Shown here in pieces: positions 3,663 to 61,255 of a stretch of 64,000 nt of DNA. The stretch is taken from IMG/VR virus record IMGVR_UViG_3300021057_000274, positions 62,001-126,000 of that record. The stretch is one strand, 5' to 3'. Each line of letters begins with the position of its first letter. Position 1 is the first letter of the stretch. Made by a program: the position numbers and the translations under genes. Below the pieces are notes generated by a model. The model worked only from the letters and a program-made list of their open reading frames with translations, did not search any database and was not told where the DNA came from.

Positions 3663-5876
3663 GTGACACAGCTCTCGAAGAACATCGTCGCCCTGTCCAA
3701 GGGCCTGGTCGTGATCCCGCGGGGATCTGGCCTCAAGATGCAGTTGCGCGAGGACGTATACGCGGCCTCCCTCCAAGCGTCGCTGATGCAGCTCGGCTAC
3801 ATGCTGAGCCGCGAGGCGTACGCCCTCGCCCTCTCGGCGCCGGCCGAGTGGGTCAAGGAGTTCTACGACGAGGCGATCCCGTACCTCAAGGAGGCGGTCG
3901 GGGCGAAGCGCGACTACCGTGCGATGTATCGCAACTTCCCCCAGCAGGTCATGGACCTGTCACACGTCGATCTGTTCATCAACGCGATCACTCACTATTG
4001 GTCAAACGGCCAGTGGGAGCCGCCGCACGAGCTAGCTGAGCGCGGCGTCAAGTTCGAGAGCACCGAGTTCAAGCTGCTGAAGCCGATCGACGAGGCCGGT
4101 TTTCTCAACCTCTTCACCCAGATGGTGGCGATCGGCCAAGCGCTCACTCCTCAAGACCGCAAGATCGTCGAGTGGTTCATCGACTCGGGGCTGAAGCTCA
4201 CCCTGCCAGAGACGATCCCGTTCAAGGAGACCCTGTGCCTGCTCGCTGCGAAGGGTCTCAACGTTCCGGTGAAGACTCCGACCGACGTGCTCCGCATCGC
4301 GGTTCACCTGTCTGGCGGTGACATCTCGCTGCCGGGCATCCCGTCGGCGAAGGTGAAGGCGCCGACCGGTGGCCGCTACTCCTCCGCTCGCTATTGGGAG
4401 ACCTACTATCGAGAGAGCGCCGAGAGAGCCGCGGCCGCCGCGCGCGAAGCGTTCAAGTTCAGGAAGTTCAAGCGACCGCAGCGACGCCTGCTGCTCGAGA
4501 TGCTTGACCGCGTCGCCGACGTCGCCGAGATGCAACGCTACCTCGGCCGCTGGCTCCGTCTGGGTGAGATCCTCCACCCGGGCGAGTTTGCCGGAAAGTT
4601 CCCACGCGCCCACGCGGCGTTCAAGACCCTTCGTAACCAGGAGGGACCAGACACTCGAGTCCGCACGTTCGACGCGCAGGTCAACCTCGCTTTCGCCGCG
4701 AGCGCGAGGGCTGGTTTGAAGGTTTTGACGACCCGGCCGGGCGAGTTCGCTCGCCGCCTGGATTGGCTGCTCCGCACCCATGACGCCGAAGCGGTCATGG
4801 ACGTTTTCACCGAGATCGCGCCGCGAATCAGCTCGAAGGTGCTGTTCGAGCTGTGGACTCACCTGGTCAATCGTGAGACTCCGGGCGCGGCGCGGACGGT
4901 CATGCTCAAGGGTCGCGGCGCGAAGTTTAAGACCCTTCCGACCCTCCCGGCGCTCCCGACCGACGTCGTGCAGCTCGCGACGCGGACGATCGCTAAGGCC
5001 CTCAAGGGCAAGATCAAGGACGCGAAGCTGCCGAGCCTGGGTAACGTTTGGATCGACCCGCAGCTGGCGACCCTGCCGCTGCCAGCGTCGATGCGTGACA
5101 TGAACACCGGTCTCAAGACGTACGTTCGCGGCACCCGTCTGCCGTTCCGCGGGGACGCGAAGGTGGTTCGCGCGTTCGTGCACTGGTACGACGAGGACGG
5201 GACTCAAGACATCGACCTGAGCTTCTCGTTCCACGGCCACAGCCTGGAGGCGATGGGGCACGTCAGCTTCACGAACCTGCGCGAGGGGGCGTGGGCGGTG
5301 CACTCGGGCGACATCCGTCACCGGGTCGGCTCGTGCGCGGAGTACATCGATGTCAACATCGAGAAGGCTCGCCAGCGCGGCGTCCGCTACGTGATGGTGC
5401 ACTGCTACAACTTCAACGGTCGTCCGATGCACACGGTGCCAGAGTGCCGCTTCGGGATGATGGAGCGCGAGCACCAGCGCTCGAACGAGATCTTCGAGGC
5501 GCGCACCGTGACCAACGCGATGCCCCTGATCAACCAGGGCACCACGGTCCTGGCGTGCATTCTCGATCTCCAGGAGCGCTGCATGATCTGGGCGGACATG
5601 GAGGCGGATCGCTACCTGGCGGTCGTTGAGAACACCGCGAGCAAGGCCGCGGAGGCGATCCGCAAGCTGGTGGGTCGTCCTGCGATCTCGGTCGCCGACC
5701 TGCTGCGCATGCACGCCGAGGTGCGCGGCGAGGTGGTGCAAGACGAGGCTCGCGCAGACACGAAGTTCAAGGCCGAGGACCTGACGACGGATTACGTCAC
5801 GATCGCGGGGCTGATGTCCCTCGACGCGCCGGCCAAGAAGGCGCCGGCGTCTAAGCGAGTGAAGATCGCCGCGTAA
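3663..5876 (+). CDS. large protein with C-terminal TerD-like domain (resembles SCO0854/MXAN_6230-type proteins)
   Basis: GGAGG RBS plus GTG; RPGEFARRLDWLLR; C-terminal DIDLS..HSGDI..AEYIDV TerD-like motifs. Confidence 0.7.
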   Translation: MTQLSKNIVALSKGLVVIPRGSGLKMQLREDVYAASLQASLMQLGYMLSREAYALALSAPAEWVKEFYDEAIPYLKEAVGAKRDYRAMYRNFPQQVMDLSHVDLFINAITHYWSNGQWEPPHELAERGVKFESTEFKLLKPIDEAGFLNLFTQMVAIGQALTPQDRKIVEWFIDSGLKLTLPETIPFKETLCLLAAKGLNVPVKTPTDVLRIAVHLSGGDISLPGIPSAKVKAPTGGRYSSARYWETYYRESAERAAAAAREAFKFRKFKRPQRRLLLEMLDRVADVAEMQRYLGRWLRLGEILHPGEFAGKFPRAHAAFKTLRNQEGPDTRVRTFDAQVNLAFAASARAGLKVLTTRPGEFARRLDWLLRTHDAEAVMDVFTEIAPRISSKVLFELWTHLVNRETPGAARTVMLKGRGAKFKTLPTLPALPTDVVQLATRTIAKALKGKIKDAKLPSLGNVWIDPQLATLPLPASMRDMNTGLKTYVRGTRLPFRGDAKVVRAFVHWYDEDGTQDIDLSFSFHGHSLEAMGHVSFTNLREGAWAVHSGDIRHRVGSCAEYIDVNIEKARQRGVRYVMVHCYNFNGRPMHTVPECRFGMMEREHQRSNEIFEARTVTNAMPLINQGTTVLACILDLQERCMIWADMEADRYLAVVENTASKAAEAIRKLVGRPAISVADLLRMHAEVRGEVVQDEARADTKFKAEDLTTDYVTIAGLMSLDAPAKKAPASKRVKIAA

Positions 5877-19193: not shown

Positions 19194-19286
19194 TCCTCGG
19201 TACTCTAACGGTAAGAGACCTGGCTGTTAACCAGACGTATCCCGCCACCGAGCGGTATGGAGGTTCGAGTCCTCCCTGAGGAGCCA
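19194..19286 (+). tRNA. tRNA-Asn(GUU) with long variable region
   Basis: Loop CTGTTAA, G73, ~23-nt variable region. Confidence 0.85.
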
Positions 19287-23151: not shown

Positions 23152-23907
23152 ATGCTCTACGTAGGAACCAGCGGCTTCCAGTACAAGCACTGGAACGACG
23201 GCGTGTTCTACCCGTCTGGCGTCAAGGATCGCTTGGCGTTTCTCAGCCAACGGATGAACGCTCTCGAGATCAACGCGTCGTTCTACAGCATTCCAAAACC
23301 GGGGAGCGTGCGGCGCTGGAGCGAGAAGCTTCCGCAGAACTTCAAGCTAACGCTCAAGGCTCCTCGGTCGGTCACGCACCGACGTCGCCTCAAGCTGCGG
23401 AGCGACCCGACGATCAAGCAAGGCTGGGACCTCCTCCGCTACTTCTCGGAGGGCGTTCTTCAGATCGCTCCGCAGCAGCGAGGACCTGTTCTCGTGCAGT
23501 TGGAGCACAGATTTAAGATCGATCTCGACCGCTTAGAGGCCGTGCTGGAGTTCTTCAGAGTTCTCCAGCTGACCGTTGCGCTCGAGGTAAGGTGTACCTC
23601 CTGGCTTCGGATGGAGACGCTCAGGCTGCTTCGAGAGTATCGAGGCGCGTTGGTCTCCGCGGATTGGAGGGAGTGCACGGTGCCGATCTACGACACGGGA
23701 AGCTTCGTGTACGTGCGCCGCCACGGGTCGCTCGGACGATACTTCGGGTCATACTCGAGGGCCAAGCTCCAGGCTGATCTCGACGCGGTAGCGCCGTACC
23801 TAGAGCAAGGGCGCGACGTCTACGTCTTCTTCAACAATGACGGCGGCGGCGCGGCCCCGAGGAACGCAGTAAGCATGCTTAAGTTAGCAGATGTCCGATT
23901 CGTCTAG
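23152..23907 (+). CDS. DUF72 (YecE-like) family protein
   Basis: YVGTSGFQY.HW..FYP, EINASFY, KAP..TH, FFNN. Confidence 0.9.
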   Translation: MLYVGTSGFQYKHWNDGVFYPSGVKDRLAFLSQRMNALEINASFYSIPKPGSVRRWSEKLPQNFKLTLKAPRSVTHRRRLKLRSDPTIKQGWDLLRYFSEGVLQIAPQQRGPVLVQLEHRFKIDLDRLEAVLEFFRVLQLTVALEVRCTSWLRMETLRLLREYRGALVSADWRECTVPIYDTGSFVYVRRHGSLGRYFGSYSRAKLQADLDAVAPYLEQGRDVYVFFNNDGGGAAPRNAVSMLKLADVRFV

Positions 23908-25614: not shown

Positions 25615-25854
25615 ATGAATCTCAAGGACATGGTCTCAGGCAACAAGCTCGTGCGGTTCTCCTTTTACCGTGAGGGCCAGCTCTGGTACAAGACGGAGTG
25701 CGGCTTCGAGTTTCCCGTGCCCACCGATCCCAACGAGATCGGCACCGCCGTCTTCCTCGCGGAGGACAAGGCGCTGCTCTTCATGCGGTACATCAGGAAG
25801 CACCTCGACTATCTCAACAAGGCCAAGCAAGAACAAGCTGGAGATGCCGGTTAA
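25615..25854 (+). CDS. hypothetical protein
   Basis: 79-aa ORF with phage-like codon use. Confidence 0.7.
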   Translation: MNLKDMVSGNKLVRFSFYREGQLWYKTECGFEFPVPTDPNEIGTAVFLAEDKALLFMRYIRKHLDYLNKAKQEQAGDAG

Positions 25855-25969
25855 GACCCGGCCGGGCGCGCGTGAGTTACCGCGGCACGTAGTTTAAACC
25901 TAGAACGCCAGCTACTCACTTAGGAGTCAAACATGACGCACCTCCGAAAACATCCCGCTACACCTCGAC

Positions 25970-26675
25970 GGGAGAGTGGTGTTAACGGTTGAGCACAGCG
26001 GACTTATTCATGAGCTTGATGCGCTATGTAAAATAGACGTCATGCTCATGTGTCAGCACTGCAATAGATCCACATCGCAACGTCAAGCGCTCATCATGCA
26101 TGAGCGGTCGTGTAAGCAGAATCCTAATAGAGTGCCCGGGAAGAATTCCTGGTCCAATCCAACCTACAAAATGTCGGAAGAGACTAGGCAGAAGCTTCGT
26201 GAGAGCACGATCCGAAGAAATCGAAGCATGTCTCTAGAGTGCGCAGGAAGATCTCTGAGGGGCGGATCAGGTATCTGCGTGACCATCCTGAGATGGTGCC
26301 ATACAAACTCAATCATAAATCTAAGGGTAGATCTTTCCCGGAGAGATACTGGGGAGAGCTCCTGAAGAAATACGGTCTAGAGTTCGTCGAGCAGTTTCAG
26401 GAATCTACCTACACGCTTGACTTCGCATTCCTTGATCGCAAGATCGACCTCGAGATTGACGGAGAACAACACTACGTCGATCCTAGGATTGTTTCCTCTG
26501 ATCAGCGCCGAAATGCTTTTCTTGAGGGACGAGGATGGAAGATTGTTCGAGTGCGCTGGTCTAAGTACCAGCAGCTTTCTGGAGATGATCGCGAAAAGTT
26601 CGTCACGAATCTCGTTGAAAGCCTGACGACAGGTTAATCCGACAGGTCTCGGTTCGAATCCGAGTTCTCCTACCA
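25970..26675 (+). tRNA. tRNA-Lys(UUU) split by 628-nt insert (exons 25970-26005, 26634-26675)
   Basis: Joined exons give gggagag/ttctcct-A-CCA and cgga-CTT|TTAA-tccg. Confidence 0.8.
26042..26637 (+). CDS. EDxHD/DUF559 homing endonuclease with Zn finger and NUMOD3-like repeats; one -1 frameshift near 26239
   Basis: CQHC..HERSC; SEETRQKL; ER..LDF..LEIDGEQH..DQRRN..GWK.VR. Confidence 0.8.
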
Positions 26676-26749
26676 CGTAATTGTGTGTGTTCTTTTGAGT
26701 GATTTTGAGATATAATGTCTCATATTCAACGGTCCTGGAGGCGGGAAAC

Positions 26750-27148
26750 GTGGAAAAGATCACCAAGTTCGACAAACACAATCTTCAACTCCTTCGCCAA
26801 GAGATGAACGCCGCGCTAGCCACAGTCGGGGCGAAGTACGGCATCAAGGCAAACATCGGTAACATCAAGTACAGCGAGTCGGCATTCTCTTGCCCGCTAG
26901 CGGTGATCGTTGAATCCGCGGTCGCAGATCCCCGGCTCGAGAGCGTGGCGCCAGAATCGATCATCCACCTCAAAAAGAAGTGCGGTGACAAGGCCCTCCT
27001 CAAGCAGATCACCTACAACGGCCGCAAGATGGTGGTCGTCGGACTACGCGGCAGCAATTTTCTGGTGCGTGTTGACGGTGTCGACGGCGTCCGGAAGTTC
27101 AAGGGCCGTTGCTTCAGCGAAATATACGACGCGATCCTGAACCAATAG
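26750..27148 (+). CDS. hypothetical protein
   Basis: GGAGG RBS, TATAAT promoter upstream. Confidence 0.75.
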   Translation: MEKITKFDKHNLQLLRQEMNAALATVGAKYGIKANIGNIKYSESAFSCPLAVIVESAVADPRLESVAPESIIHLKKKCGDKALLKQITYNGRKMVVVGLRGSNFLVRVDGVDGVRKFKGRCFSEIYDAILNQ

Positions 27149-27359
27149 AATCGCATAAATCGAATGATGCCTCCCGGGTAACCGGGAGCGCAAGCGGAGC
27201 TAGATGACCTGATCTAGCTTCGGCCGTCTCTGGAATTAGCGTCGAGCGTCACGTTGACGCGCGCAAGCTAAGGAGTTACTCCTGAAGCCTCGCGTGATGC
27301 CGCACGCCGGACCCAGTTGGGGCGTATCAGGTAGCTTGCATTTTTCTAGGGAGCAGATC

Positions 27360-28025
27360 GTGCTGTACACGTTTGTCGGAGATGTCCACGGAAAGTGGGA
27401 GGCCGTCGAAGCGGCCCTGGCCAACGACGGCCAGGTGATCTTCGTGGGTGACATCGTCGACTCGTACGGAGATCGAGGAGTAGAAGATTATCGCCGCTGT
27501 TACGATCTCATCCTCGCCGCGATCGAGAAGGGTAAGGCTCGCGCGATCTTCGGTAACCACGAGCTCTCGTACTACATGCCGTATACACATGCGGCGTCAG
27601 GGAAGACAGACGCGTCGATCGACATGATGAAGGAGTACGAGGCCAAGCTCATGCAGAAGTTCGAGCCGTTTATTCTGCTTAACTCGCGATTTCTGGTGTC
27701 ACACGCCGGGCTCAGCAATGAGATCTGGGAAGCTGGATATCTCGATCAAGCCGATGACTTGCAAGCTCGCCTCACGATGTGGTGGCATGATCTTAAGTCA
27801 CCTATGCACTGGATCGGTGTCGTGCGTGGCGGAAAACAATTCGTCGGCGGGATGTTCTGGTGCGACTTTCGCCGGGAATTTCAACCAGTATCTGGGTTGA
27901 CTCAAGTGTTCGGTCACACCCGCGGGCGTGACATCCGCTTCGCGGAAGATCCAGTCAAGGGTGGGTCTTATTGCATCGACTGTCTAGACTTCACGGAGAA
28001 CAAGTTCCTCCAGCTAGACGTCTAA
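27360..28025 (+). CDS. calcineurin-like metallophosphoesterase
   Basis: GDVHG, GDIVD, GNHE, HAG, GHT. Confidence 0.92.
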   Translation: MLYTFVGDVHGKWEAVEAALANDGQVIFVGDIVDSYGDRGVEDYRRCYDLILAAIEKGKARAIFGNHELSYYMPYTHAASGKTDASIDMMKEYEAKLMQKFEPFILLNSRFLVSHAGLSNEIWEAGYLDQADDLQARLTMWWHDLKSPMHWIGVVRGGKQFVGGMFWCDFRREFQPVSGLTQVFGHTRGRDIRFAEDPVKGGSYCIDCLDFTENKFLQLDV

Positions 28026-36233: not shown

Positions 36234-36887
36234 ATGAGCTTCGCGACAGCTGCAAACGTTTTCGCTCAAAACCGCGTCTTACGCAACACGTTCTTTCTGC
36301 TCGCTCTCAGCTTCATCACCACGATCGCTGGGACGATCGGCGGCATCATGGCAGGGTTGCCAGCCTGGGGTAGCGAGAACCCCGTCACCTTCGCGGTGAT
36401 CAGCCTGGTCGGCGCCATCGGCTTGATCTTCCTGACCCACGCGTTTCGAGACGACGCGTTGGGAGTTCCTCTCTTCCTCGCCTTCTCTCTCTTTGAGGGT
36501 GGCGCGATCTGCGGGTTGATCAATCAGGTCTGGACCAACCCAGGCGGCCCGATGATCATCGCGAACGCGTTCGCTGGCACCGCGCTCGTCACCGTCGGCT
36601 GTTCGATCTACGCGATGGTCACCAAGCGCGACTTCAGCGTCTTCGGCGGCTTTCTCTTCGGAAGCTTGTTAGCGCTTCTCGGCCTGATGGTCCTCGCGCT
36701 AGTCTTTGGCTTCTATGGCACGTGGATCTCTTACCTCGCGATTCCGCTCTTCTCGTTCTACCTGATCTGGGACGTGCAACGAGTCGTCGACGGTGGCGAA
36801 GACAACTACATCTCAGCCGCGATCGGCATCTACCTAGACGTCCTGAACATCTTCTTGCACATGCTCAACATCGGCAAGGATGATTGA
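36234..36887 (+). CDS. Bax inhibitor-1/YccA family membrane protein
   Basis: 7 TM, NYISAAIGIYLDVLNIF. Confidence 0.9.
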   Translation: MSFATAANVFAQNRVLRNTFFLLALSFITTIAGTIGGIMAGLPAWGSENPVTFAVISLVGAIGLIFLTHAFRDDALGVPLFLAFSLFEGGAICGLINQVWTNPGGPMIIANAFAGTALVTVGCSIYAMVTKRDFSVFGGFLFGSLLALLGLMVLALVFGFYGTWISYLAIPLFSFYLIWDVQRVVDGGEDNYISAAIGIYLDVLNIFLHMLNIGKDD

Positions 36888-55384: not shown

Positions 55385-56374
55385 GTGAGCGGAAATCTTC
55401 GAGTCGGGTTAGTCGGACGAAAGCCAGCCAAGGTCACAGATGACATCACCGACCTCGAGCGCTTGATGCGCGAGGTCGCGAGGGTGATCGCTCACCATGG
55501 AAAGCTCATCGTTGAGGAGAGCACGTACAACTACCTCTTCACTCGCGACAACATCACGAAGATCGGCCTGATCGGTGAGTGGTCATCGCTCAGGGGAGCA
55601 AATCTCGATCTAGCGGTTGTGGTCGGAGGTGACGGCACGATGCTAGAGGCGGCGCGAAATCTCTACAACATTCCGTTGATCGGCGTCAACATGGGGCGAC
55701 TAGGCTTCATCACCGACCTCCCCAGAGTCGGAGCCGCGCAGGTCATTGATCTCATCCTACGCGATTGGGCCGCGTGGGATCGAGAGCGATCGAGCGACGG
55801 TCCTGTTCCAGCATACCCGAAGAACGTCACCCTCGAGAGACGCGCGCTCATCCACGCCGAGAGAGACAACGTCTCTTGGGGAGACGCCCTCAACGACATC
55901 GTCATCTCAAAGACGGGCGGACGCATCCTCGAGTTCAAGGTCTTCGTGGATGAGAAGTTCGCTTACAAGGTTCGAGCCGACGGGTTGATCATCTCCACCC
56001 CGACCGGCTCTACGGCTTACGCCTACTCCGCGGGTGGGTCAATCTTGAGCCCCGGGTCACACACCCTACAACTCATTCCGATGATGCCCCAAACACGATC
56101 CTACAGTCCGCTGATCATCAGCGACAGGGAGTGCGTCAGGGTTGAGATGGTGGCTGGTGAGGCTCGGATCTGGGCCGACGGCATCGATTCGGGAACGATC
56201 GTGCAACCAGATCTGGTCAAGCCAGCGATCTCCCGCAACAGCTCCTGGGTGAACGTGTGTCGCTCTTTTCATGACGCGGTTTTTGTTCACCCCCACTTCT
56301 CGGATCTGGATTACGAGTACTTCCAGACCCTCCGAGAAAAACTCAACTGGCATCTCGAGCCAGGAACACGATGA
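55385..56374 (+). CDS. nadK: NAD+ kinase
   Basis: GGDGT, LNDIV, TPTGSTAY..SAGG. Confidence 0.95.
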   Translation: MSGNLRVGLVGRKPAKVTDDITDLERLMREVARVIAHHGKLIVEESTYNYLFTRDNITKIGLIGEWSSLRGANLDLAVVVGGDGTMLEAARNLYNIPLIGVNMGRLGFITDLPRVGAAQVIDLILRDWAAWDRERSSDGPVPAYPKNVTLERRALIHAERDNVSWGDALNDIVISKTGGRILEFKVFVDEKFAYKVRADGLIISTPTGSTAYAYSAGGSILSPGSHTLQLIPMMPQTRSYSPLIISDRECVRVEMVAGEARIWADGIDSGTIVQPDLVKPAISRNSSWVNVCRSFHDAVFVHPHFSDLDYEYFQTLREKLNWHLEPGTR

Positions 56375-56928: not shown

Positions 56929-58035
56929 GTGGACCCCAAGATCTATCTGGTAGGCGGCGCTGTACGAGACCACGTGCTGGGAGTTCTCAGCAAGGATCGT
57001 GACTACGTCGTCGTCGGGGCCACTCCCGAGTGGATGATTGAGCGCGGCTTCAAGCGGGTGGGAGCCGACTTCCCGGTTTTCTTGCACCCTGAGACCAGGT
57101 ACGAGTACGCCCTGGCGCGGCAAGAGCGCAAGACCGGCCCAGGCTATCACGGCTTCGACACTCGGTTCGACCCCAGCATCACGCTGGAGGACGATCTGCG
57201 TCGTCGTGACTTGACGATCAACGCGATGGCGATGACCGACGAGGGTGAGATCATCGACCCGTTCGGCGGCTTGACCGACCTGAAAGCTGGCGTGTTGCGT
57301 CACACCAGCGAGGCCTTCGCCGAGGATCCGTTGCGCGTCTTGCGCGTCGCTCGCTTCGCCGCTCGCTATGATTTCACGATCGACCAGACCACCGTCGAGC
57401 TGGCGCGGAAGATCGTCGCTTCAGGCGAGCTGAACTCCCTGCCGCGCGAGCGCTTCTGGACCGAGCTGTGGAAGGGTTTCAACGAGAAGCATCCCTCCAA
57501 GATGATCTCCGCTCTGGAGAACATGAACGCGATTGCGACGGCACCGCTGAACCAGTACTTCGGCAGAAATTTCTCTCTGGACGTCACCGTCGAGAAGATG
57601 AAAGCCGCCGAAAAGAAGTCACTCCCGGCGATCGCCGTTGCAGCTCTGACCCTGGGGCCGATAGACGCCGACAAAGCGAACGAGCTGCGGGTGCCCTCAG
57701 ACGTGTACCGCGTTCATGTCTGGGCCAATAAGCTGGCGATGCTGCACACCCATGACACGGCTGAGAAGATGATCAAGTTCATGGGAAGCATCAAGTATGA
57801 CATCACCAACCCCGACTACTATGCGGCGCTGAGAACTAGCGAGCTGATCGCGTCGCTGATGCTGGACGATCGCAACTTTTCTCGGTGGCACGAGATGAGC
57901 GGCCGAATGGTCATGGTCGACGCCGAGCTGAAGAAGACCAACTTCAAGGAGGTCGCCGAGAACGGGCCGAAGGCGACCATCAGGGAGCGGATTAACGCCG
58001 CTCGCTTAGCCGCGGCCCGGAGAGCTTTCAGCTAA
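56929..58035 (+). CDS. cca: tRNA nucleotidyltransferase (CCA-adding enzyme, class II, no HD domain)
   Basis: [36 protein letters not shown]. Confidence 0.95.
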
Positions 58036-61180: not shown

Positions 61181-61255
61181 GCTCCCTTAGCTCAGCGGCA
61201 GAGTACGGGACTCTAAATCCTAGGGTCGTGGGTTCGAATCCCACAGGGAGCACCA
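61181..61255 (+). tRNA. amber-suppressor tRNA (anticodon CUA)
   Basis: Cloverleaf, loop CTCTAAA, A73, CCA; own TGATATAAT promoter. Confidence 0.88.

What the first reader, a model, noticed from the sequence alone, without database searches (positions are those of the whole stretch)
25970..26675. tRNA-Lys(UUU) interrupted by a ribozyme-less insert filled by a homing endonuclease ORF
Seen: the two exons join uniquely at anticodon 34/35 (cgga-CTT|TTAA-tccg) into an intact tRNA with A73 and CCA, and it is the only Lys(UUU) in the window. The 628-nt insert has 36 nt before the ORF, and the ORF stop TAA lies in the 3' exon's anticodon loop. The insert ends can pair (ttcatgag 26007-14 with ctcgttgaa 26611-19) and a gcctg-acga-caggt hairpin abuts the 3' junction. 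Known: EDxHD/DUF559 nucleases normally ride group I introns, whose core needs about 200 nt. No such core is visible here. Inference: a protein-spliced or novel tRNA intron class, or an HEG-parasitised tRNA.
Basis: partly seen in the sequence, partly recalled or inferred. Interest (0 to 1): 0.9.

Follow-up and report, generated by a model that had tools for sequence, protein, structure and literature searches.

The report
Homing endonuclease gene splitting a tRNA-Lys
A selfish nuclease gene that normally sits beside phage tRNA-Lys(UUU) genes has here landed inside one, in the anticodon loop and without any self-splicing RNA, so it most likely broke the tRNA rather than forming a new kind of intron.

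Summary
The split tRNA is real. No group I or II core was detected. The insert is a complete free-standing homing-endonuclease (HEG) cassette: a 36-nt leader hairpin, then a zinc-finger/NUMOD3 plus Vsr-like (DUF559, EDxHD-type) nuclease.

In 30 of 36 distinct IMG/VR loci the same HEG family lies free-standing, directly beside an intact tRNA-Lys(UUU). In one locus (L007) it lies beside a tRNA-Lys(UUU) that carries a true group I intron at 35/36.

One sister element (L063, 57% identity) sits at the same 34/35 site with an intact HEG. Its tRNA halves no longer form an acceptor stem, and a spare tRNA-Lys(UUU) follows it. The two inserted copies form one clade.

Best reading (about 0.7): the HEG targets the tRNA-Lys anticodon arm and integrated into its own target, fracturing the tRNA. 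The HEG in the window is now decaying. This is a new variant of known "intronless homing" and "fractured gene" biology, not a new intron class. Splicing by unknown means is not excluded (about 0.1).

The parts
25970..26005 (+). tRNA-Lys(UUU) 5' half (positions 1-34: acceptor 5' strand, D arm, anticodon stem 5' strand, C32 U33 U34)
   Evidence: ARAGORN on joined exons and with -i; sequence
26006..26633 (+). 628-nt insert: a complete free-standing HEG cassette (leader plus ORF). Its GC content (0.46-0.51) is lower than that of the flanks (0.56-0.60).
   Evidence: no Rfam family at E<=10; no similarity to phage tRNA group I introns
26009..26050 (+). Leader hairpin. Its 3' arm holds the ATG codons and its loop holds an A/T-rich TAAAATA motif. 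Read here as a translational-control hairpin of the HEG.
   Evidence: fold -20.6 kcal/mol, z -2.6; an equivalent hairpin in L063 (z -3.65); the same layout is described for Vsr-like and T4 HEGs (PMC2677866, PMC2988022); TATAAATA motifs upstream of many family members
26042..26206 (+). HEG N-terminal piece (frame 2): CxxC...HxxxC zinc finger plus first NUMOD3-like motif. The frame then runs on out of register to the TGA at 26363-26365.
26204..26212 (+). Approximate site of the frameshift (net -1) that breaks the HEG
   Evidence: alignment A1 of both pieces with intact homologues; codon reading
26212..26637 (+). HEG C-terminal piece (frame 1): second NUMOD3-like motif plus Vsr-like/DUF559 nuclease with the E..D...H..D motif. 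The stop TAA (26635-26637) is U36 A37 A38 of the tRNA.
   Evidence: Pfam MTES_1575 8.5e-10 and DUF559 1.1e-8; 73 homologues; invariant residues; family profile matches I-Bth0305I catalytic domain 3r3p, E 4e-5
26634..26675 (+). tRNA-Lys(UUU) 3' half (positions 35-76: U35 U36 A37 A38, anticodon stem 3' strand, variable loop, T arm, acceptor 3' strand, A73, CCA)
   Evidence: (weak partial tRNA match)
26627..26647 (+). 8-nt direct repeat CGACAGGT (26627-26634 and 26640-26647). The end of the insert copies tRNA positions 41-48. This may be a scar of the original insertion.
   Evidence: read; a weaker counterpart (5/8) in L063; not tested further

Best explanation
**What it is.** The window comes from a 389-kb uncultured phage contig (IMGVR_UViG_3300021057_000274) with a large tRNA array. 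A homing endonuclease gene lies in the DNA of the array's tRNA-Lys(UUU) gene, between anticodon nucleotides 34 and 35. The protein has a zinc-finger/NUMOD3 DNA-binding N-terminus and a Vsr-like, EDxHD-type nuclease C-terminus. This lineage is normally free-standing directly beside phage tRNA-Lys(UUU) genes.

**Inferred mechanism.**
- The enzyme recognises the tRNA-Lys(UUU) gene, probably the pseudopalindromic anticodon arm.
- It cuts HEG-less alleles in co-infecting phages, and break repair copies it in together with neighbouring tRNA sequence.
- In the common ancestor of the window element and L063, the whole cassette (leader hairpin plus ORF, borrowing U36-A37-A38 as its stop codon) integrated at or next to the cut site.
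- That destroys the enzyme's own target, which gives self-immunity. It also fractures the tRNA.

**Consequence.** The insert carries no ribozyme, so the tRNA is most likely not restored. The gene is then a casualty that the phage tolerates, because the host, or a second copy as in L063, supplies tRNA-Lys(UUU). In the window the HEG has since acquired a frameshift, which is the degeneration stage of the HEG life cycle.

**Shown:** the anatomy, the homology, the absence of a detectable ribozyme, the sister element, and the family-wide linkage to tRNA-Lys.

**Inferred:** the target site, the mode of insertion, and the absence of splicing.
For: 1. The split tRNA and its unique junction are real.

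2. The insert is only a HEG cassette.
- The ORF pieces align end to end with intact homologues of about 190-250 aa.
- The 36-nt leader is a start-codon-sequestering hairpin of the kind described for Vsr-like and T4 HEGs (PMC2677866 section 14; PMC2988022 section 12).

3. No ribozyme was detected.
- Rfam at E<=10 with permissive filters finds no intron or small ribozyme in the window or in L063.
- The same library does detect group I introns in tRNAs of related loci at gathering score (L007 57.9 bits, L012 54.5, L031 58.8).
- In a blastn control, the ORF-bearing insert of L080, which Rfam missed, matches those introns at E 1e-22 and 1e-7. The window and L063 inserts have only short matches of 8-22 nt, at E 0.045 or higher.
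- Synonymous sites between the two inserts show no conserved block (45/100 third positions identical).

4. Family context.
- 30 of 36 distinct IMG/VR HEGs directly abut an intact tRNA-Lys(UUU), upstream or downstream. About 21% would be expected from the share of Lys(UUU) among neighbouring tRNAs (binomial 1.5e-15).
- L007 has the HEG abutting a tRNA-Lys(UUU) interrupted at 35/36 by a bona fide group I intron.

5. Sister element L063.
- The site (CTT|...|TTAA), frame and borrowed stop are the same, and the HEG is intact at 189 aa.
- Only 4 of 7 acceptor pairs can form, and ARAGORN does not call the tRNA.
- An intact tRNA-Lys(UUU) follows 43 nt downstream.

6. The two in-tRNA HEGs form one clade (bootstrap 99 / SH-aLRT 95). 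They lie in non-syntenic arrays.

7. Exon identity between the two loci falls with distance from the insertion site, as co-conversion predicts.

8. I-Bth0305I, the characterised EDxHD enzyme, is a homodimer. It cuts next to its insertion site at the centre of a 14-bp pseudopalindrome (PMC3239194). Site 34/35 is one nucleotide from the dyad of the anticodon arm.

9. No RNA ligase, RtcB or splicing endonuclease was found among the 42 flanking window ORFs scanned.
Against: - The exons in the window are intact. Their stem quality is within the range of the phage's other tRNAs.
- This is the only tRNA-Lys(UUU) seen in 64 kb holding 41 tRNAs.
- The arrangement has survived long divergence (57% identity between the two HEGs). 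That would be easier to understand if it cost little.
- Both inserts follow a U and end in G. L063 can form a 5-bp P1-like pairing with a terminal U-G pair. These features recall group I conventions.
- Only 64 of 389 kb were searched for splicing or ligation enzymes.
- There are no expression data.
- The frameshift rests on a single assembly. The only other record is the same sample's contig.
- The target site of the enzyme is inferred, not measured.
Confidence: 0.7

Rival explanations
1. The insert is a functional intervening sequence. The pre-tRNA is cut at both junctions and religated by phage or host proteins, or by the nuclease-fold protein itself. That would give a working tRNA-Lys(UUU) and a ribozyme-less, protein-spliced tRNA intron in a bacterial virus.
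For: - The exons are intact and this is the sole Lys(UUU) in the window.
- The arrangement is old and is shared by two diverged elements.
- The PD-(D/E)xK fold also gives a weak RAP-domain match (9.4e-5; PDB RAP proteins).
- Only part of the genome was visible.
Against: - A canonical bulge-helix-bulge cannot form with only nucleotides 32-34 and 35-38 available around a 34/35 site (reasoned from the sequence, not computed). The full-length folds of the window and L063 share no junction structure.
- The L063 halves cannot form an acceptor stem.
- No ligase, RtcB or EndA was found among the 42 flanking window ORFs scanned.
- The nuclease is 40-57% identical to free-standing relatives that have no intron to splice.
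- The HEG in the window is frameshifted, so a maturase role would be lost.
Confidence: 0.08
2. A cryptic or highly reduced self-splicing ribozyme overlaps the coding sequence. The element would then be a true group I-type mobile intron whose core is hidden in the ORF.
For: - The 5' exon ends in U and the insert ends in G in both elements.
- Short P1-like pairing with a U-G pair is possible (3 bp in the window, 5 bp in L063; read).
- Site 34/35 is the classical position of the bacterial tRNA-Leu(UAA) group I intron (from my own knowledge).
- Rfam missed the ORF-bearing intron of L080, so a negative CM result alone is weak.
Against: - Only 36 nt (window) or 10-25 nt (L063) are non-coding, and they form the HEG leader hairpin.
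- The whole ORF is homologous to free-standing HEGs.
- There is no similarity to four phage tRNA group I introns. The L080 control is detected at E 1e-22.
- No block of synonymous-site conservation was found.
- There is no Rfam hit even at E 10.
Confidence: 0.04
3. The fracture is kept because it is useful to the phage or to the element rather than merely tolerated. One possibility is that the split allele serves as the immune allele in a phage that relies on host or other tRNA-Lys. Another is that the flanking tRNA halves act as RNase P / RNase Z processing signals that release and stabilise the HEG mRNA from the highly transcribed array.
For: - Persistence across two diverged, non-syntenic loci.
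- The ORF uses the anticodon-loop UAA as its stop in both.
- Relatives likewise run their ORFs into the first 10 nt of the tRNA.
- RNase E processing of the segB and segG transcripts, and of a site in the Aeh1 mobE transcript, is reported in PMC2988022 section 11.
Against: There is no direct evidence. The frameshifted HEG in the window argues that nothing here is under strong selection now. The L063 halves cannot pair, so they would not form an RNase P substrate.
Confidence: 0.12
4. Assembly artefact: the insertion or the frameshift is a chimera or an error of the metagenome assembly.
For: There is a single assembly. The only other record (Ga0196981_1000006) is the same sample and is identical.
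Against: An independent contig from another sample (L063, 3300027902) has the same insertion site and frame. A chimera would not fall precisely inside an anticodon loop with both halves complementary. The frameshift is not in a homopolymer run.
Confidence: 0.03

Closest known systems
EDxHD / Vsr-like homing endonucleases (I-Bth0305I; Dassa et al. 2009, PMC2677866; Taylor et al. 2011, PMC3239194)
   Same: - Vsr-like PD-(D/E)xK catalytic domain with the E-D-H-D motif at the C-terminus.
- Modular DNA-binding N-terminus.
- Phage-borne.
- 5' UTR hairpin with a late-promoter-like motif.
- The family profile matches the I-Bth0305I catalytic domain.
   Different: - I-Bth0305I sits inside a group I intron in recA.
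- This lineage is attached to tRNA genes.
- In the window and L063 it lies inside the tRNA with no intron around it.
- The sequence relationship is distant (E 4e-5, detectable by profile only).
Fractured genes: free-standing HEG between the two halves of a host gene (PMC2677866); Aeh1 mobE splitting nrdA (cited in PMC2988022)
   Same: A free-standing HEG cassette with its own control hairpin is inserted into a conserved host gene and breaks it into two pieces.
   Different: In the protein cases the product is restored by split inteins or by subunit assembly. Here the host gene is a tRNA broken in the anticodon loop, and no restoring mechanism was found.
T4 SegB and intronless homing in the T-even tRNA cluster (PMC2988022; Brok-Volchanskaya et al. 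2008 as cited there)
   Same: A free-standing HEG lives between tRNA genes, cuts in the tRNA region of a related phage, and drags neighbouring tRNA genes along. It is regulated by a hairpin and a late promoter.
   Different: SegB is a GIY-YIG enzyme and lies between genes. The present family is Vsr-like, is tied to one isoacceptor, and here sits inside the gene.
Collaborative / trans homing of a free-standing HEG with an ORF-less group I intron (summarised in PMC2988022 section 16)
   Same: Locus L007 has exactly this layout. The HEG abuts a tRNA-Lys(UUU) whose anticodon loop carries an ORF-less group I intron one nucleotide from the window's insertion site.
   Different: In the window and L063 the HEG itself, not an intron, occupies the site.
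I-Ssp6803I, a PD-(D/E)xK HEG in the group I intron of cyanobacterial tRNA-fMet (cited in PMC2677866)
   Same: A PD-(D/E)xK-fold HEG that targets the anticodon region of a tRNA gene.
   Different: It is carried by a self-splicing intron and belongs to a very different branch of the fold.
Archaeal bulge-helix-bulge introns carrying LAGLIDADG HEGs (my own knowledge, not checked here)
   Same: Ribozyme-less intervening sequences in stable RNA genes that contain a HEG ORF.
   Different: - They need a BHB motif and the archaeal splicing endonuclease and ligase.
- No BHB can form here.
- The relatives of this HEG are in phages of bacteria.

Membership tests
Group I self-splicing intron | Conserved catalytic core (P3-P9) recognisable by covariance model or by similarity to known introns | tested here: not met
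   No RF00028 hit at E<=10 in the window or L063. No blastn similarity to four phage tRNA group I introns, whereas the ORF-bearing L080 control is found at E 1e-22.
Group I self-splicing intron | Enough non-coding RNA (about 200 nt) to build the core | tested here: not met
   36 nt (window) and 10-25 nt (L063) are non-coding. The rest is ORF homologous to free-standing HEGs.
Group I self-splicing intron | U at the end of the 5' exon paired to G in P1; terminal G of the intron | tested here: inconclusive
   Both inserts follow U and end in G. P1-like pairing of 3 bp (window) or 5 bp (L063) is possible but short, and it competes with the leader hairpin.
Group I self-splicing intron | Self-splicing of the transcript | not testable with these tools
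   Needs in-vitro transcription with a GTP/Mg assay.
EDxHD / Vsr-like homing endonuclease | Vsr-like nuclease domain | tested here: met
   Pfam MTES_1575 8.5e-10 and DUF559 1.1e-8. Profile A2 matches 3r3p (I-Bth0305I) at 4.2e-5 and 3hrl at 1.5e-5.
EDxHD / Vsr-like homing endonuclease | Catalytic E, D, H, D residues | tested here: met
   E84, D86, H90 and D93 of piece B are invariant in 24 sequences.
EDxHD / Vsr-like homing endonuclease | Separate N-terminal DNA-binding module | tested here: met
   Zinc finger plus NUMOD3-like repeats align with homologues. NUMOD3 (PF07460) is recorded for several homologues.
EDxHD / Vsr-like homing endonuclease | Intact reading frame | tested here: not met
   Frameshift at about 26204-26212 in the window. 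The frame is intact in L063.
EDxHD / Vsr-like homing endonuclease | Site-specific cleavage of the HEG-less allele, and homing | not testable with these tools
   No HEG-less allele of this phage was found. Needs a cleavage assay or phage crosses.
Free-standing HEG / fractured-gene arrangement | HEG cassette with its own 5' hairpin and promoter-like motif between two halves of a host gene | tested here: met
   description in PMC2677866
Free-standing HEG / fractured-gene arrangement | A device that restores the host gene product (split intein or subunit assembly in the known cases) | tested here: not met
   No ribozyme. No shared junction structure in the full-length folds. No ligase or endonuclease in the window ORFs scanned. 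The L063 halves are incompatible.
Archaeal/eukaryal protein-spliced tRNA intron | Bulge-helix-bulge motif at the junctions | tested here: not met
   With the insert at 34/35, only nucleotides 32-34 and 35-38 lie between the anticodon stem and the junctions. They cannot form the 4-bp helix (reasoned from the sequence, not computed). The full-length folds of the two elements share no junction structure.
Archaeal/eukaryal protein-spliced tRNA intron | Splicing endonuclease and RNA ligase available | tested here: inconclusive
   None among the 42 flanking window ORFs scanned. Only 64 of 389 kb were visible, and the host is unknown.

The most novel reading that the evidence does not exclude
A bacteriophage tRNA-Lys(UUU) is restored from a ribozyme-less, HEG-filled intervening sequence by a protein-dependent cut-and-ligate pathway or by a cryptic RNA activity. 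That would be a bacterial-virus counterpart of archaeal HEG-bearing introns, and it would persist as a mobile 'intron' in at least two diverged phages.
Probability: 0.08. Interest if true: 0.9.

Novelty: new variant of a known kind. Interest (0 to 1): 0.5.

Why it matters
If the main reading holds, this is a natural example of a homing endonuclease gene entering its own target in a stable-RNA gene without any splicing element. That is the costly 'naked' step which models of mobile-intron origin assume but which is rarely seen.

One HEG lineage here shows all the stages side by side:
- free-standing beside the tRNA (about 30 distinct loci);
- free-standing beside a tRNA protected by an ORF-less group I intron (L007);
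- inserted in the tRNA (the window and L063).

This makes the 'collaborative homing' pathway testable in one system.

It also has a practical consequence. tRNA counts for huge phages obtained with intron-tolerant predictors can include fractured, probably dead genes.

A nuclease family aimed at tRNA-Lys(UUU) genes is of interest because phage tRNA-Lys is a known battleground with anticodon nucleases (my own knowledge). Cultured relatives in E. coli T4-like phages and in Rhizobium phages make experiments feasible.

Tried and rejected
- **Search for a HEG-less or closely related allele.** Exact-pattern scans with the 5' exon, the 3' exon and the T-arm/acceptor sequence in IMG/VR and JGI metagenomes found only the same contig, or a chance hit in a non-tRNA context. 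The flanking 149-aa protein finds only itself. blastn against GenBank phages finds nothing.

- **Search for more split loci.** A junction pattern gave 14 chance hits and no tRNA halves. A second protein search seeded with the L063 enzyme found no closer relatives. A scan of species genomes gave 6 loci, none split by this HEG.

These are absent from the minimum-energy folds and are not conserved.

- **Resistance signature.** I looked for a simple difference in the anticodon stems of HEG-adjacent tRNA-Lys genes. The stems are very diverse and show no clear pattern.

- **Exon decay in the window.** The count of non-Watson-Crick pairs is not an outlier.

- **Sigma-70 promoters and terminators around the locus.** Nothing above shuffled expectation.

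- **Programmed frameshift.** Rejected, because there is no slippery motif at the shift and the sister gene is in one frame.
Full report
**1. Observation**

The window is part of IMGVR_UViG_3300021057_000274, a 389,331-bp viral contig. The same sequence exists in the source metagenome as Ga0196981_1000006. The window holds 41 tRNA genes on the + strand between 9570 and 28108, plus one at 61181. There is a Lys(CUU) gene but no uninterrupted Lys(UUU) gene.

With introns allowed, ARAGORN calls tRNA-Lys(UUU) at 25970-26675 with a 628-nt insert after nucleotide 36 of the gene. The joined exons fold into a canonical 78-nt cloverleaf with A73 and CCA. The junction is unambiguous: CTT|TTAA, between anticodon positions 34 and 35. 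The stems contain three G-U pairs and one mismatch. That is within the range of the other 41 tRNAs (0-5, mean 2.3). The insert is less GC-rich than its flanks.

An independent contig shows the same junction (section 4).

One detail is wrong. The insert does not hold one ORF. Frame 2 from the ATG at 26042 encodes a CxxC...HxxxC zinc finger and a NUMOD3-like motif. Frame 1 from about 26212 to the TAA at 26635-26637 encodes a second NUMOD3-like motif and a DUF559/MTES_1575 nuclease. Aligned with intact homologues of about 190-250 aa, the two pieces abut at about 26204-26212. The gene therefore carries a net -1 frameshift. The shift is not in a homopolymer or a slippery site.

**2. What the insert is**

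The nuclease piece has 73 homologues at E<=1e-15. Most carry DUF559/MTES_1575, and several carry NUMOD3. The residues E84, D86, H90 and D93 are invariant. A family profile matches the catalytic domain of I-Bth0305I (3r3p, E 4.2e-5) and a DUF559 structure (3hrl). This is the Vsr-like, EDxHD-type homing endonuclease family. It was first described as free-standing inserts in 'fractured' phage genes, as well as in group I introns (PMC2677866, PMC3239194).

The 36 nt ahead of the ORF fold with the start of the ORF into a hairpin at 26009-26050 (-20.6 kcal/mol, z -2.6). The ATG codons lie in its 3' arm and an A/T-rich TAAAATA motif lies in its loop. Dassa et al. report this layout, a 5' UTR hairpin often with a TATAAATA late-promoter element, for 15 of 16 such endonuclease genes (PMC2677866 section 14). 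The same layout is reported for the T4 endonucleases, SegB included (PMC2988022 section 12). Many free-standing members of the present family have TATAAATA just upstream of the ATG.

The insert is thus a complete HEG cassette and nothing more.

**3. No ribozyme detected**

Rfam with permissive filters and E<=10 gives no intron, hammerhead, twister or other ribozyme in 25700-26900 or in the sister locus. The method does work on this kind of DNA. Group I introns inside tRNA genes of related contigs score above the gathering threshold:
- L007:4427-4681, 57.9 bits;
- L012:6074-6254, 54.5 bits;
- L031:401-652, 58.8 bits.

Rfam did miss one ORF-bearing case. In L080 a tRNA with a UAA anticodon has a 684-nt insert holding an HNH ORF. 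I therefore ran a control. By blastn, the L080 insert matches the L031 and L012 introns at E 1e-22 and 1e-7 through its roughly 170 nt of non-coding sequence. The window and L063 inserts give only short matches of 8-22 nt at E 0.045 or higher.

Codon-wise comparison of the two inserts shows no stretch of unusual synonymous conservation. Of 100 identical degenerate residues, 45 share the third base. A hidden core overlapping a protein that is homologous throughout to free-standing genes is therefore very unlikely.

A bulge-helix-bulge motif cannot form either. Only nucleotides 32-34 and 35-38 lie between the anticodon stem and the junctions. Full-length folds of the two elements share no junction structure.

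**4. Relatives**

A scan of IMG/VR with the family alignment returned 54 loci, including the window.

Among the 36 distinct non-window HEG sequences:
- 18 have an intact tRNA-Lys(UUU) as the gene immediately upstream;
- 12 have it immediately downstream, usually with the ORF ending in the first 10 nt of the tRNA;
- one (L007/L020) abuts a tRNA-Lys(UUU) that carries a group I intron;
- only five lack an immediate Lys(UUU) neighbour.

Lys(UUU) makes up 63 of 576 tRNAs in these loci. Thirty of 36 therefore compares with about 21% expected (binomial 1.5e-15).

In L007 the HEG ORF (3806-4459) runs through exon 1 of a tRNA-Lys(UUU). The anticodon loop of that tRNA is interrupted between positions 35 and 36 by a 272-nt intron, CTTT|c...g|TAA. 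This is the 'collaborative homing' layout (PMC2988022 section 16).

The second-best protein hit, P0002, led to L063 (JGI 3300027902, 2,546 bp). There an intact 189-aa HEG (1036-1605) lies between tRNA-Lys halves at the same site (ggaCTT|at...ag|TTAAtcc). It is in the same frame relative to the junction and has the same borrowed TAA stop. It also has an 11-bp leader hairpin over its ATG (z -3.65).

The L063 halves share the D arm, anticodon stem and variable loop with the window tRNA. However, their acceptor strands (GGACGTA and CACTCCC) form only 4 of 7 pairs. ARAGORN does not call the tRNA, and no alternative partner exists in the contig. An intact but divergent tRNA-Lys(UUU) follows at 1648-1722.

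The two in-tRNA HEGs are sister taxa (99/95). They remain so when 129 proteins are included (SH-aLRT 86-91). Their tRNA arrays are not syntenic.

Identity between the two sets of exons is highest next to the insertion site and lowest in the acceptor stem. Co-conversion during homing would produce this pattern. It would also explain a chimeric, mismatched acceptor in L063.

In cultured phages, relatives (29-44% identity) are annotated 'homing endonuclease protein' or left unannotated. They again abut tRNA genes:
- tRNA-Met in Rhizobium phage RHph_TM30;
- tRNA-Arg(UCU) in E. coli T4-like phage F2.

**5. Mechanism**

*Shown:*
- A HEG cassette of a tRNA-Lys-linked lineage lies in the anticodon loop.
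- No ribozyme was detected.
- The HEG in the window is frameshifted.
- A sister element has decayed or chimeric exons and a spare tRNA.

*Inferred:*
- The enzyme targets the tRNA-Lys(UUU) gene. The two independent interruptions linked to this HEG (34/35 by the HEG, 35/36 by an intron) lie within one nucleotide of the dyad of the anticodon-arm pseudopalindrome.
- This fits the one characterised EDxHD enzyme. It is a homodimer that cuts beside its insertion site at the centre of a 14-bp pseudopalindrome (PMC3239194).
- Insertion at the site destroys the target and so protects the carrier genome, but it fractures the tRNA.
- An 8-nt direct repeat may be a scar of a non-homologous founding event. 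The last 7 nt of the insert plus U35 copy tRNA positions 41-48. L063 has a 5/8 version.
- Without a restoring device the tRNA is probably dead. The element spreads as a drive, and in the window the HEG has begun to degenerate.

I put this reading at about 0.7.

**6. Rivals**

- *Protein-dependent splicing (about 0.08).* It is kept alive by the intact exons, by the lack of another Lys(UUU) in 64 kb, and by the age of the arrangement. It is weakened by L063, by the lack of a BHB, by the frameshift, and by the absence of ligase or endonuclease genes among the 42 flanking ORFs scanned. Those scans found a NinI-like metallophosphatase, a CCA-adding-type nucleotidyltransferase, a UvrD helicase and others, but no RNA repair set.
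- *Cryptic ribozyme (about 0.04).* It has only the U/G termini and a short P1-like pairing in its favour.
- *A retained use of the fracture, as an immune allele or as processing signals for the HEG mRNA (about 0.12).* This is compatible with the data but untested.
- *Assembly artefact (about 0.03).* L063 makes it unlikely.

**7. Comparison and novelty**

The element works like the free-standing HEGs of T-even phages (SegB in the tRNA cluster, intronless homing). It also works like the 'fractured genes' of Dassa et al. It is a member of the Vsr-like, EDxHD-type family by domain, motif and profile tests. It fails the defining tests for a group I intron and for a BHB intron.

Full-text searches found no report of a HEG lying in a phage tRNA anticodon loop without an intron. 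They also found no report of a Vsr-like HEG lineage tied to tRNA-Lys(UUU).

I therefore rate it a new variant of a known kind, of moderate interest. Its fallback (a HEG-parasitised tRNA) is.

Noticed in passing
L007:3806-4749 (IMGVR_UViG_3300007754_000007; same in L020): A HEG of this family abuts a tRNA-Lys(UUU) that carries a bona fide ORF-less group I intron (4438-4709) between anticodon positions 35 and 36. The HEG ORF reads through exon 1 into the intron. ARAGORN miscalls the gene as tRNA-Arg(tcg) with an intron. This is a 'collaborative homing' layout.
   Followed up: partly
L002:4407-4490, L005:4399-4483, L019:3637-3725, L022:3514-3603, L025:4687-4774, L012:3405-3494 and others: Many phage tRNA-Lys(UUU) genes next to these HEGs are 83-90 nt long with a long variable arm. 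This is unusual for tRNA-Lys, yet Rfam scores them as good tRNAs (49-65 bits). It may be a target-site or anti-defence variant. No explanation was tested.
   Followed up: partly
L080:2184-2943 (MAG contig JAKSLB010000007.1): A 76-nt tRNA with a UAA anticodon carries a 684-nt insert holding an HNH endonuclease ORF (2247-2792). Rfam finds no intron, but the flanking non-coding parts match phage tRNA group I introns (E 1e-22). It is therefore an ORF-bearing group I intron that the covariance model misses.
   Followed up: yes
L084 (Escherichia phage F2, NC_054913.1:159189-159557) and L085 (Rhizobium phage RHph_TM30, CDS 131780-132367): Cultured-phage relatives of the HEG also end at the 5' edge of a tRNA gene: tRNA-Arg(UCU) in T4-like coliphages and tRNA-Met in the Rhizobium phage. 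In phage F2 the ORF is not annotated at all.
   Followed up: partly
window 26627-26634 and 26640-26647: An exact 8-nt direct repeat, CGACAGGT. The end of the insert repeats tRNA positions 41-48. L063 has a 5/8 counterpart. It may be a scar of the insertion event.
   Followed up: no
window 19194-19286 and 61181-61255: There is a 93-nt tRNA-Asn(GUU) directly before a normal 75-nt copy. There is also a tRNA with a CUA anticodon (called Pyl by ARAGORN), which is probably an amber suppressor.
   Followed up: no
window 23152-23907, 27294-28025, 56929-58035, 55385-56374, 36234-36887: Protein genes lie within or near the tRNA array:
- DUF72 (2.5e-51) inside the tRNA array;
- a NinI-like metallophosphatase inside the tRNA array;
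- a PolyA_pol-head (CCA-adding type) nucleotidyltransferase;
- an NAD kinase;
- a Bax1-I family membrane protein.
   Followed up: no
L015-L019, L022, L025, L036, L038, L009 (open frames of 297-368 aa): In a sub-clade of the family, the open frame continues about 100 aa beyond the nuclease domain before the next tRNA. This suggests an extra C-terminal domain.
   Followed up: no
L063:1648-1722: The intact tRNA-Lys(UUU) after the split copy is atypical. Its anticodon loop is CTTTTAC, its T loop is non-canonical, and its Rfam score is only 31.8 bits. It may be a nuclease-resistant variant.
   Followed up: no
L031:7711-7964: A cyanobacterial-type (permuted) tmRNA gene lies in a viral contig that also carries this HEG and a group I intron (401-652).
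   Followed up: no
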